The position numbers and the translations under genes are program-made. A DNA stretch of 64,000 bases from Lytechinus pictus. Taxonomy: Eukaryota. Location: positions 5,766,001 through 5,830,000 of the forward strand of contig NC_087262.1 in the NCBI RefSeq assembly GCF_037042905.1. The letters run 5' to 3'. Shown here one piece after another: positions 38,786 to 40,628 of the stretch. Each line of letters begins with the position of its first letter. Position 1 is the first letter of the stretch. The notes beneath the pieces were generated by a model, which worked only from the letters and a program-made list of their open reading frames with translations, was not told the origin of the DNA and made no database searches.

Positions 38786-39529
38786 TTGATAGCTTTTCAT
38801 TACTTGATTTTCATTGAAATGGCACTTGGTTCCTTTTGGAACAGAAGCTTTTAAATGCATCTCTTGACTTTAATTCAATGTGATATTAAAGAAGGAGGGG
38901 GTGGGGACGGGTGAGAAGTAATGGATTTCATTCACAACCACAAAACGAGCATGATCAATAGCATGCGGCAGGTTGGTTTATTCAAGACAAACCACGCGAG
39001 GTTTTTCGGTGTATCGACCGTTAACATTCTATCAATATATTGATGTCTCAATTCATCCTAAGCATGATACTGTATCCTGTTAATCAAGACTCTTTTATCT
39101 GTATTCGTGTCATTGTATTCTAATCATTTGCCTTTTCTTCCCCCTCACCCATTTTTTCCCCCTTTCTTTTTTTTTCTTCAAAACTACCCCATGAAATTAA
39201 TTCCCGTGATGGCATATTTGACGGTTGGGTGTGATTTTCCTTCCAATCTATACTTATCAACGAAAATAACTTTTGTGTGGATTCGTTTGGACTTTTTAAC
39301 GTATTATTTGGATGCCATTTTCGTATAACATCATCTGACCTTCTCAAATCTCAAATTTATGAGCCATAATTCACTTAATCTAAACTTAAAACAAATCATT
39401 CAATTACTCGATGGACTGCTCCCCACCTGTCTAATCCTGACCCAATGGCAAATTGATCCTTGCCAACAACCTCTGGAATTATAAAATTAAAATATAAAAA
39501 ACAAATGGATTTAAAAAAAAACATGCCAG

Positions 39530-39580
39530 GTCTATACAAAGACAAAAATAAAGTCAAAACTCAAGTAGTGCAAAGGAATG
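39530..39580 (+). CDS. PPP3CA: Candidate 51-nt alternative cassette exon ([17 protein letters not shown])
   Basis: Phase 1-1, no stop, ATG|gtaagt donor. The cag acceptor follows a 439-nt stretch containing a single AG, with a distant ctaat branch point and pyrimidine tract. No adjacent polypyrimidine tract. Confidence 0.55.
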
Positions 39581-40628
39581 GTAAGTTTGTAAGGTCGTTG
39601 ACCCCTCTTGAGGTCGTTGACCTTTTTATCTTACAACGTGTGCCTAACATAGTTGATATTTACATCATGGCACTGATATATATATACTCGGAAAGCAGCG
39701 TGTTGTGTGAATTTGACCCATTCCTTTTACTAACAACTGACCAACAATATTGAAGTGGCCTCTTTAATATATGGTGAAGCTAACTCACCGGATGATAAAT
39801 ATTACCTTTGAATACTAAATTAGGACATTTATTAAAAAGATTGTGTGGGATAGAGGGGATATTGTATCAATGCTGTGTATGAAATTGAGAGAGAAGAAAC
39901 AGGGAAAAGATTTTGCCATATTTGCATACAGCATTGAGTAGAGTTGATTTTGTGAACAAGGTACTAGTATATAAATTAAATTGTGTCTTTTGAAAGTTGC
40001 GTACAGGAAGTCTTGAATCCTGTTGAATGCATTACTCTATTTGAAGCAATTTTATCGTCTTTTTGGAGTCATGATACATGTAGTTCCAGGGTCCTTATTT
40101 TAAAAGTATTTCATATTTCCCCTGGCAATATTATAAACATTTTACTTTGTCTAAGATTTTTTATATTTAGTATAATAATACTTCATTAATTCTAGAGTGT
40201 ATGATTTTGCATTGATATGTCAGTCATGGTATTTTGTATAAAAGACTAAGAAATATTCCTTAAATAAGATATGAAATAAGGCTCTGATAGTTTTTAACTG
40301 ATTCAGATGATGTTTAAAACTAGATATATACAGAAGTTGTTTAAAAAAAATTATGTCGAGCTTAAATTCTCTTCACTTCACAAAGATGACCTTTTATTGG
40401 GTTAAGTATTTCAGTAGGTTCGTATTTATTCTTATTCCCATTTCTCTCTGTTCTCCCCCTAATGTTCTTTCTATCCCTTCTATTTCTTTGCCTTTCCCTT
40501 ACTTGTTATTTCTCCCTCCCTCCTCTCTTCAACATTCTCCTCCCCTCTCTCTCTTTATCATTCCCGCTCCTCTATCCCTTTCTTCTTTTCTCTCTCATCT
40601 TTTACTCTTTCTCTATCCCTCCCCCTCT

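What the first reader, a model, noticed from the sequence alone, without database searches (positions are those of the whole stretch)
38940..39590. 439-nt AG-depleted zone and distant branch point before a lysine-rich 51-nt exon
Seen: between 39089 and 39527 there is only one AG (a GAG at 39361-39363). A ttctaat branch-like motif at ~39118-39124 is followed by a ~50-nt almost pure pyrimidine tract. The first YAG is at 39527-39529 and a gtaagt donor follows 51 nt later. Three GCATG motifs (38949, 38961, 39062) lie just upstream. Known: long AG-exclusion zones mark distant-branch-point, regulated exons, and upstream Rbfox sites usually repress inclusion. Inference: a tightly regulated exon adding a basic peptide.
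Basis: partly seen in the sequence, partly recalled or inferred. Interest (0 to 1): 0.7.

Follow-up and report, generated by a model that had tools for sequence, protein, structure and literature searches.

The report
Candidate calcineurin exon behind AG-free zone
In a sea-urchin calcineurin A gene, a 439-base intron stretch almost free of the splice-acceptor letters AG runs from a strong branch-point signal to a possible 51-base optional exon, a layout known from vertebrates; the exon is probably real, but no splice-junction read was seen.

Summary
Window 39089-39527 holds one AG (14 expected). It starts with CTAAT (A39123) and a 56-nt tract that is 91% pyrimidine. It ends at the CAG at 39527-39529. 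Then come 51 in-frame, stop-free bases and the only G|GTAAGT in the intron.

The gene is calcineurin A (+ strand). The site lies in a 27.8-kb intron between the exon ending at 36166 and the calmodulin-binding exon at 63978. Inclusion would add 17 residues to linker LR1, at the junction where vertebrate Ppp3cb/cc carry the 27-nt exon 10a.

In 526 kb of strand from this genome it is the longest non-repetitive AG-poor zone. Five others reach 331-406 nt, so roughly one this long is expected per Mb of strand.

In the one run where the gene is covered (X14), the exon's bin holds about 250 sense-strand letters and the neighbouring intron bins hold none. This fits inclusion, but repeat-derived rows crowded any junction rows out of the tables.

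Against it: no local pyrimidine tract, intron-like 31% GC, one GAG inside the zone, no matching protein.

Real cassette exon with a distant branch point: about 0.5. Chance pseudo-exon: about 0.35.

The scan has noted several similar AG-free zones (436-1100 nt) elsewhere in this genome.

The parts
36089..36166 (+). Constitutive calcineurin A exon (…[26 protein letters not shown], end of the CnB-binding helix and start of linker LR1). It ends in phase 1 with donor G|GTAGGC.
   Evidence: Nine spliced RNA reads in X14 are confined to the exon.
38949..39066 (+). Three GCATG motifs (38949, 38961, 39062), 57-175 nt upstream of the candidate branch point. None is TGCATG.
   Evidence: Clusters like this occur about once per 45 kb of strand, so this is weak evidence.
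39089..39527 (+). AG-depleted zone: 439 nt with one AG (GAG at 39361-39363).
39118..39124 (+). Branch-point-like TTCTAAT (CTAAT, branch A at 39123), 405 nt upstream of the CAG.
39125..39180 (+). Pyrimidine tract of 56 nt, 91% C/T, with several TCTT/TTCT (PTB-type) motifs.
   Evidence: Tracts of this quality occur once per about 20 kb of strand.
39361..39363 (+). The only AG inside the zone, in the weakest acceptor context (GAG|C). Using it would give a 217-nt frame-shifting exon with early stop codons.
39431..39441 (+). Alternative proximal branch-point-like motifs: CTAAT (A39434, -94) and CTGAC (A39440, -88). Only 53-57% pyrimidine follows them.
39527..39529 (+). Candidate 3' splice site CAG|G. 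It is preceded by an A-rich stretch (aaaaaaaaacatgccag), not by a pyrimidine tract.
39530..39580 (+). Candidate 51-nt cassette exon, phase 1 to phase 1. Joined reading: …[30 protein letters not shown]…, which adds 17 residues. GC is 31% and it contains AATAAA.
   Evidence: About 250 sense-orientation RNA letters lie in its bin in X14.
39581..39586 (+). Consensus 5' splice site, AATG|GTAAGT. It is the only G|GTAAGT among the 15 GTRAGT sites on the + strand of the 27.8-kb intron.
63978..64000 (+). Start of the next constitutive exon (calmodulin-binding domain, [29 protein letters not shown]). It runs past the window end. Its acceptor has a 95% pyrimidine tract.

Best explanation
The 51 nt at 39530-39580 are a genuine, conditionally included cassette exon of the single calcineurin A gene of this sea urchin. 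Inclusion inserts 17 basic residues into linker LR1, between the calcineurin-B-binding helix and the calmodulin-binding domain.

The acceptor has no pyrimidine tract of its own. The inferred mechanism is that the spliceosome assembles on the distant branch point A39123 and its 56-nt pyrimidine tract, then takes the first good AG downstream (CAG at 39527-39529) and passes over the poor GAG at 39362. Selection against new AGs between branch point and acceptor would then account for the 439-nt AG-depleted zone.

The long branch-to-acceptor interval and the CU-rich tract would make the exon easy to repress, by PTB-type or possibly Rbfox-type factors, so it is skipped in the default mRNA.

Shown: the sequence anatomy, the reading frame, the gene context and the rarity of the zone. 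Suggestive: RNA letters over the exon in one sample. Inferred: use of the splice sites, the position of the branch, and any regulation.
For: 1. AG-specific depletion with sharp edges: 1 AG against 14.4 expected, GA = 16, 0 of 20,000 shuffles; 9 AG in the 175 nt before the zone and 9 in the 85 nt after it.
2. It is the longest complex AG-poor zone in 526 kb of strand. Equally frequent dinucleotides give no zone >=300 nt (AC, GT) or only three of <=324 nt (GA, TC).
3. The best branch-point-plus-tract lies at the 5' end of the zone, and pyrimidine tracts of that quality occur only once per about 20 kb of strand. The acceptor itself has 35% local pyrimidine, against 70-95% at the five real acceptors of the gene. 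Gooding et al. 2006 (PMC1431707) describe this layout for distant-branch-point exons, with AG exclusion zones up to 438 nt and branch points at -351 and -389.
4. The donor is the only G|GTAAGT in the 27.8-kb intron, and the exon is frame-preserving and open.
5. RNA: X14 is the only run in which the gene's exons are covered (9 reads confined to the 78-nt exon). There the exon's 197-nt bin holds about 250 letters in the same orientation, while unique intron bins on both sides hold none. The letters add up: 756 + 364 + 250 is close to 9 reads of 151 nt.
6. The same junction carries alternative inserts elsewhere: vertebrate exon 10a (P0422, P0358; PMC5577920) and crustacean models (P0217, P0203, P0238).
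Against: No junction read or loose-end row for 36166^39530 or 39580^63978 was visible, and the 250 letters could also be one short pre-mRNA read pair (2 x 125). One GAG lies inside the zone, so the strict AG-free run is only 164 nt. Proximal branch-point-like motifs exist at -94 and -88. The exon has 31% GC, like its intron flanks (30-39%) and unlike the real exons (43-50%), and it contains AATAAA. No protein with the insert was found, though no echinoderm calcineurin was among the 437 proteins fetched. Five other AG-poor zones of 331-406 nt were found in random genome samples, and none is followed by an evident exon. In-frame open pseudo-exons are common in this intron: 17 acceptor-donor combinations. 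The zone has no stabilising RNA structure (z = +2.2).
Confidence: 0.5

Rival explanations
1. Neutral intron sequence. A G-poor, partly pyrimidine-rich patch happens to lack AG and happens to be followed by an in-frame pseudo-exon with a good donor. Nothing is spliced here.
For: AG-poor complex zones of 331-406 nt occur five times in 400 kb of random strand, and none is followed by an evident exon. The intron holds 15 GTRAGT sites and 17 in-frame open acceptor-donor combinations. The acceptor has no pyrimidine tract. The exon's composition is intronic, and its lysine-richness is a by-product of A-richness. No homologous insert was found in any fetched protein. No junction row was seen.
Against: Several features must coincide by chance. 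A zone >=439 nt is extrapolated at about one per Mb of strand. A pyrimidine tract that occurs once per 20 kb, with a consensus branch point, sits exactly at its start. The zone ends at a CAG, followed by a frame-keeping open exon and the intron's only G|GTAAGT. In addition, sense-strand RNA letters are confined to the exon's bin in the one sample that expresses the gene, with empty unique intron bins around it.
Confidence: 0.35
2. A real cassette exon that uses a proximal branch point (CTAAT A39434 or CTGAC A39440, 88-94 nt upstream) with a weak pyrimidine tract. The AG-poor stretch further upstream and the strong tract at 39125-39180 are then coincidental or serve another purpose.
For: Two good YTNAY motifs lie at -94 and -88, and the 164 nt upstream of the acceptor are strictly AG-free. 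The GAG at 39362 would not need to be bypassed.
Against: Only 53-57% pyrimidine follows these motifs. The further 345 nt with a single AG, and the tract at its start, are left as an unexplained coincidence.
Confidence: 0.08
3. The strong branch point and tract serve the first AG downstream (GAG at 39362). This gives a 217-nt frame-shifting 'poison' exon (39364-39580) that sends the mRNA to decay, or the site acts as a splicing decoy or stepping-stone in removal of the 27.8-kb intron.
For: GAG at 39362 is the first AG after the tract. The 217-nt version is out of frame and has stops within 7 codons. Long introns often contain such elements (general knowledge).
Against: GAG|C is the weakest acceptor context. 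No RNA letters lie in bin 39231-39427, which holds the first 64 nt of the 217-nt version. The site is not a recursive splice site, because the acceptor is followed by GTCTAT, not GTRAGT.
Confidence: 0.04

Closest known systems
Distant-branch-point exons marked by long AG exclusion zones (Gooding et al. 2006, PMC1431707: PTB exon 11, nPTB exon 10, alpha-tropomyosin exon 3, GABBR1 exon 23)
   Same: The branch-point consensus and a long pyrimidine tract lie at the 5' end of a long AG-free interval. There is no pyrimidine tract at the acceptor. The exon is small and probably alternative. The branch-to-AG distance of 405 nt is in the range of the longest human cases (-351, -389; zones of 381 and 438 nt).
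   Different: The branch point and use of the exon are not shown here. One GAG interrupts the zone. The organism is a sea urchin, where no such exon has been mapped experimentally to my knowledge.
[quoted passage not shown] 2017, PMC5577920; linker 'LR1' of Rudgalvyte and Glauser 2025, PMC12503234)
   Same: A frame-preserving cassette in the same intron and at the same split glycine codon. It lengthens the linker between the CnB-binding helix and the calmodulin-binding domain. Compare P0422 …TLE[DHYISSYQK]GGTTVRKE with …TFE[[17 protein letters not shown]]GGSAAARKE here.
   Different: 51 nt against 27 nt. There is no sequence similarity, and a motif scan found no exon-10a-like peptide elsewhere in the intron either. 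Inclusion of exon 10a is proven and muscle-specific; here inclusion is unproven.
Rbfox / PTB-repressed cassette exons
   Same: GCAUG motifs lie upstream, and a CU-rich tract with UCUU motifs lies at the branch point.
   Different: The GCATG sites lie 467-580 nt from the acceptor and lack the 5' U, and such clusters are common in this genome. No binding or regulation data exist.

Membership tests
Distant-branch-point / AG-exclusion-zone exon | AG-free interval of >=100-150 nt immediately upstream of the acceptor | tested here: met
   164 nt strictly AG-free; 439 nt with a single GAG.
Distant-branch-point / AG-exclusion-zone exon | Branch-point consensus with an adjacent pyrimidine tract near the 5' end of the zone, and no good tract at the acceptor | tested here: met
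   CTAAT (A39123) plus 56 nt of 91% pyrimidine, 35 nt inside the zone. Local pyrimidine at the acceptor is 35%. Caveat: weaker motifs at -94 and -88.
Distant-branch-point / AG-exclusion-zone exon | The acceptor is actually used (the exon is present in mRNA) | tested here: inconclusive
   About 250 sense letters in the exon's bin in X14, with empty neighbouring bins, but no junction row was visible.
Distant-branch-point / AG-exclusion-zone exon | Branch mapped to the distant adenosine | not testable with these tools
   Needs lariat RT-PCR or lariat reads.
Calcineurin A LR1 alternative cassette (vertebrate exon 10a type) | Lies in the intron between the exon for the CnB-binding helix and the calmodulin-binding exon, and preserves the frame | tested here: met
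   The intron is 36167-63977. The exon is 51 nt, phase 1 to phase 1, with no stop.
Calcineurin A LR1 alternative cassette (vertebrate exon 10a type) | Sequence homology to exon 10a peptides | tested here: not met
   No similarity to DHYISSYQK or DHHTPISKK, and no such peptide elsewhere in the intron. The two are analogous, not shown to be homologous.
Rbfox-regulated exon | (U)GCAUG close to the exon, in excess over background | tested here: inconclusive
   Three GCATG at -467 to -580, none TGCATG. Comparable clusters occur 11 times per 526 kb of strand.
Recursive splice site / RS-exon | An acceptor AG directly followed by a 5' splice-site consensus (AG|GTRAGT) | tested here: not met
   CAG|GTCTAT.

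The most novel reading that the evidence does not exclude
Sea urchins may routinely use very distant branch points (400 nt to 1 kb) to control alternative exons. On this reading the calcineurin exon is an independently evolved counterpart of vertebrate exon 10a, making the linker before the calmodulin-binding domain a recurrent target for splicing-based tuning of calcineurin across deuterostomes and arthropods.
Probability: 0.15. Interest if true: 0.6.

Novelty: new member of a known kind. Interest (0 to 1): 0.4.

Why it matters
Calcineurin is a central calcium-activated phosphatase. The linker before its calmodulin-binding domain influences how calmodulin releases autoinhibition. In mammals small alternative exons at this junction change during muscle maturation (PMC5577920).

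A 17-residue basic insert in the single calcineurin A gene of a sea urchin would be a simple system for asking what linker length and charge do. A 405-nt branch-to-acceptor distance would be among the longest known and, to my knowledge, the first outside vertebrates to be tested. It would also add a checkable case to the series of long AG-free zones that this scan keeps finding in this genome.

If the exon is not used, the finding is an ordinary intronic pseudo-exon.

Tried and rejected
1. Repeat or transposon origin of the zone: rejected. It is single-copy in the genome, has no tandem repeat, and no >=22-nt match in 264 kb of sampled genome.
2. Structured RNA or snoRNA in the intron: no Rfam match, and the fold is weaker than shuffles (z = +2.2). 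This also gives no support for a structure that brings branch point and acceptor together.
3. Recursive splice site: rejected (CAG|GTCTAT).
4. Paralogue comparison: impossible, because the genome has one calcineurin A gene.
5. Protein databases:
- A 62-aa junction peptive with the insert found only other species' short-intron read-throughs and exon fragments.
- The representative search returned only fragments of 224 aa or less.
- A patchwork alignment meant to reach full-length proteins mis-aligned and was dropped.
- The two-step search ended in vertebrate sequences, because the best bridging fragment (P0227) was a fish protein.
- No echinoderm calcineurin was obtained, so the absence of the insert says little.
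6. Reads: the single read-laying run was swamped by repeat-derived reads at 34897-35684 and 38246-38836, so rows for low-count junctions were cut. Run X1 looks like reduced-representation DNA, with unique intron contigs at depth 3-4 and no exon coverage, so its unspliced contig over the donor was set aside.

Full report
**What is at the site.** The window is G000:C18:5766001-5830000 of an 811-Mb animal genome. Notes from earlier follow-up agents call it a sea urchin; I did not verify this independently. The + strand carries the only calcineurin A (PP2B catalytic subunit) gene of the genome.

Its exons in the window include 32412-32506, 34744-34869 and 36089-36166. The last encodes …[26 protein letters not shown] and ends in phase 1 at donor G|GTAGGC. 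The next constitutive exon encodes the calmodulin-binding domain ([29 protein letters not shown]). It starts at window 63978 and runs beyond the window. The finding therefore lies 3.4 kb into a 27.8-kb intron (36167-63977), at the linker 'LR1' between the calcineurin-B-binding helix and the calmodulin-binding domain.

**The observation.**
- AG occurs at 39087, 39362 and 39528 only, so 39089-39527 (439 nt) has one AG, the GAG at 39361-39363.
- From the zone's own composition 14.4 AG are expected. GA occurs 16 times. None of 20,000 shuffles has <=1 AG.
- The edges are sharp: 9 AG in the 175 nt before the zone and 9 in the 85 nt after it.
- TTCTAAT (39118-39124, branch A at 39123) is followed by 56 nt of 91% pyrimidine.
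- CAG is at 39527-39529 and GTAAGT at 39581-39586.
- GCATG lies at 38949, 38961 and 39062.
- The stretch is single-copy, is not a tandem repeat, has no Rfam match and no unusual RNA structure (z = +2.2).

In that sample plus the window (526 kb of strand), most zones of >=300 nt with <=1 AG are simple repeats. Among non-repetitive zones this one is the longest (439 nt). Five others measure 406, 365, 352, 336 and 331 nt. Dinucleotides of the same frequency give no zone >=300 nt (AC, GT) or only three of <=324 nt (GA, TC), so the excess is specific to AG/CT.

Extrapolating the tail gives roughly one zone >=439 nt per Mb of strand, which means about 0.03 expected in this intron. So the zone is unusual but not unique. 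The control zones are not followed by evident exons.

The GCATG cluster is weaker evidence. There are 3 such clusters on this strand of the window and 11 per 526 kb of strand, and none of the three motifs is TGCATG.

**Anatomy as a splicing unit.** The five verified acceptors of this gene have AG-free runs of 28-91 nt and 70-95% pyrimidine just upstream. The candidate acceptor has 164 nt (439 nt with the GAG) and 35% pyrimidine, being preceded by aaaaaaaaacatgccag.

Among all YTNAY motifs in the zone, CTAAT at A39123 has by far the best downstream tract. Tracts of that quality occur once per about 20 kb of strand. It sits 35 nt inside the 5' edge of the zone. Gooding et al. (PMC1431707) describe this layout for distant-branch-point exons, with AG exclusion zones up to 438 nt and branch points at -351 and -389.

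Weaker motifs (CTAAT at -94, CTGAC at -88) are followed by only 53-57% pyrimidine.

The donor AATG|GTAAGT is the only G|GTAAGT among 15 GTRAGT sites in the intron.

The 51 nt keep phase 1 and are open. The spliced reading is [30 protein letters not shown], against [13 protein letters not shown] without the exon.

Three points count against the exon. In-frame open pseudo-exons are common here, with 17 acceptor-donor combinations. The exon's 31% GC matches the intron flanks (30-39%) rather than the real exons (43-50%), so its lysine-richness is a by-product of A-richness. Using the GAG instead would give a 217-nt out-of-frame exon with early stops.

**RNA evidence.** Only one reads call was allowed. 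The three rRNA-depleted RNA runs were sampled at about 6% each.

- **Gene coverage.** The gene is visibly covered only in X14. Nine reads cross 36126, about 756 letters are confined to the bin of the 78-nt exon, and about 364 letters fall in the bin of the upstream exon. All have the first mate on the minus strand, which means sense RNA.
- **The candidate's bin.** In the same run and orientation, bin 39428-39624 holds about 250 letters. The unique intron bins on both sides (38837-39427 and 39625-40600) hold none. X12 and X13 show no exon coverage and only about 32 letters each in that bin.
- **What fits inclusion.** The three X14 numbers add to about 9 reads of 151 nt, which is what reads running from the upstream exons into a 51-nt exon would give. 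An ordinary pre-mRNA read pair landing wholly inside that one bin, with no other intronic read in 3.7 kb, would be a coincidence of about 1% or less by my estimate.
- **Why it stays unproven.** 250 = 2 x 125 is also possible. Rows for joints and loose ends were cut off, because reads from expressed repeats at 34897-35684 and 38246-38836 filled the tables. Conserved exons may also lose reads to the human filter.

I therefore count this as suggestive, not as proof. Run X1 behaves like reduced-representation DNA, and its unspliced contig over the donor is uninformative.

**Comparative evidence.** No protein with the insert was found. However, none of the 437 proteins fetched is from an echinoderm, so this weighs little.

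The junction itself is a known site of variation. Across the roughly 170 fetched sequences that contain both flanking motifs, the linker is 11-20 residues in nearly all of them. Vertebrate gamma isoforms carry the 9-residue exon 10a exactly at the split glycine codon (P0422 …TLE[DHYISSYQK]GG…, P0358 and P0394 …TCE[DHHTPISKK]GG…). Crustacean models carry 8-22 extra residues there (P0203, P0217, P0238).

Exon 10a of Ppp3cb and Ppp3cc is a proven 27-nt alternative exon, included in adult skeletal muscle (PMC5577920). The linker is called LR1 in PMC12503234. The sea-urchin candidate shows no sequence similarity to these inserts, and a motif scan found no exon-10a-like peptide elsewhere in the intron.

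**Weighing.** These points favour a real exon with a distant branch point:
- the conjunction of a rare AG-poor zone, a rare pyrimidine tract with a consensus branch point exactly at its start, and an acceptor that cannot work on its own;
- the best donor of the intron and a preserved frame;
- a sample-specific RNA signal;
- a junction that is alternatively spliced in other lineages.

These points count against it:
- no junction was seen;
- one GAG lies in the zone;
- the exon has intronic composition;
- there are no conservation data;
- comparable AG-poor zones exist that are not followed by evident exons.

I put a real cassette exon using the distant branch point at about 0.5, a real exon using a proximal branch point at about 0.08, a chance pseudo-exon at about 0.35, and other readings (poison exon through the GAG, decoy) at about 0.04. 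Regulation by Rbfox or PTB is untested inference.

**Novelty.** Both the mechanism (AG exclusion zone with a distant branch point) and the protein-level outcome (an alternative insert in LR1 of calcineurin A) are known from vertebrates. This would be a new member in an invertebrate, at the long end of known branch-to-acceptor distances. The scan has already noted several comparable or longer AG-free zones (436 nt to 1.1 kb) elsewhere in this same genome. These are unchecked notes and I did not test them here.

Noticed in passing
L001:1688-1756 (G000:C18:5830177-5830251, about 190 nt beyond the window end): A degenerate tandem copy of the calmodulin-binding exon (…KEIILSKTRAIGKMAHVFTVLR, followed by GTAAAT) lies about 110 nt after the real one. 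It has critical substitutions (RNKIR to LSKTR, R to H) and no obvious phase-1 acceptor. It could be a pseudo-exon or a mutually exclusive variant.
   Followed up: partly
window 34897-35684 and 38246-38836: Intronic repeats with very high RNA depth in all three RNA runs (hundreds-fold), at 90-95% identity. There are many 'opposite strands' joints between 34952 and 35099-35137, indicating an expressed repeat family with an inverted-repeat or hairpin structure.
   Followed up: no
window 31641-32297: A 19-nt minisatellite (AACAACCATGTAATTATGC, about 34 copies, 82% matches) that is itself AG-free. It produces the other long AG-free runs in the window.
   Followed up: partly
window 34507-34656: A perfect 76-nt tandem duplication (2.0 copies, 100% identity) just upstream of exon 34744-34869.
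   Followed up: no
By conventional criteria its acceptor is better than that of the 51-nt candidate.
   Followed up: no
window 40474-40630, next to the N run 40629-41135: A CT-rich low-complexity tract (25-26-nt units) directly abuts an N run.
   Followed up: no
proteins P0422, P0358, P0394, P0217, P0203, P0238: Inserts of 8-22 residues at exactly the same exon junction of calcineurin A in birds, sturgeon and crustaceans. Several contain Tyr and Lys (DHYISSYQK, EKGKYISKGQ, DDKLYAER…). This hints that linker LR1 is a recurrent site of alternative splicing.
   Followed up: partly
L025:7947-8298 (+) and L025:8885-9215 (+ coordinates of the minus-strand zone 786-1116); G000:C20:1000001-1010000: Two non-repetitive AG-poor zones (352 and 331 nt, 1 AG against about 14 expected each) lie on opposite strands within 1.3 kb in a random genome sample. 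Their cause is unknown.
   Followed up: no
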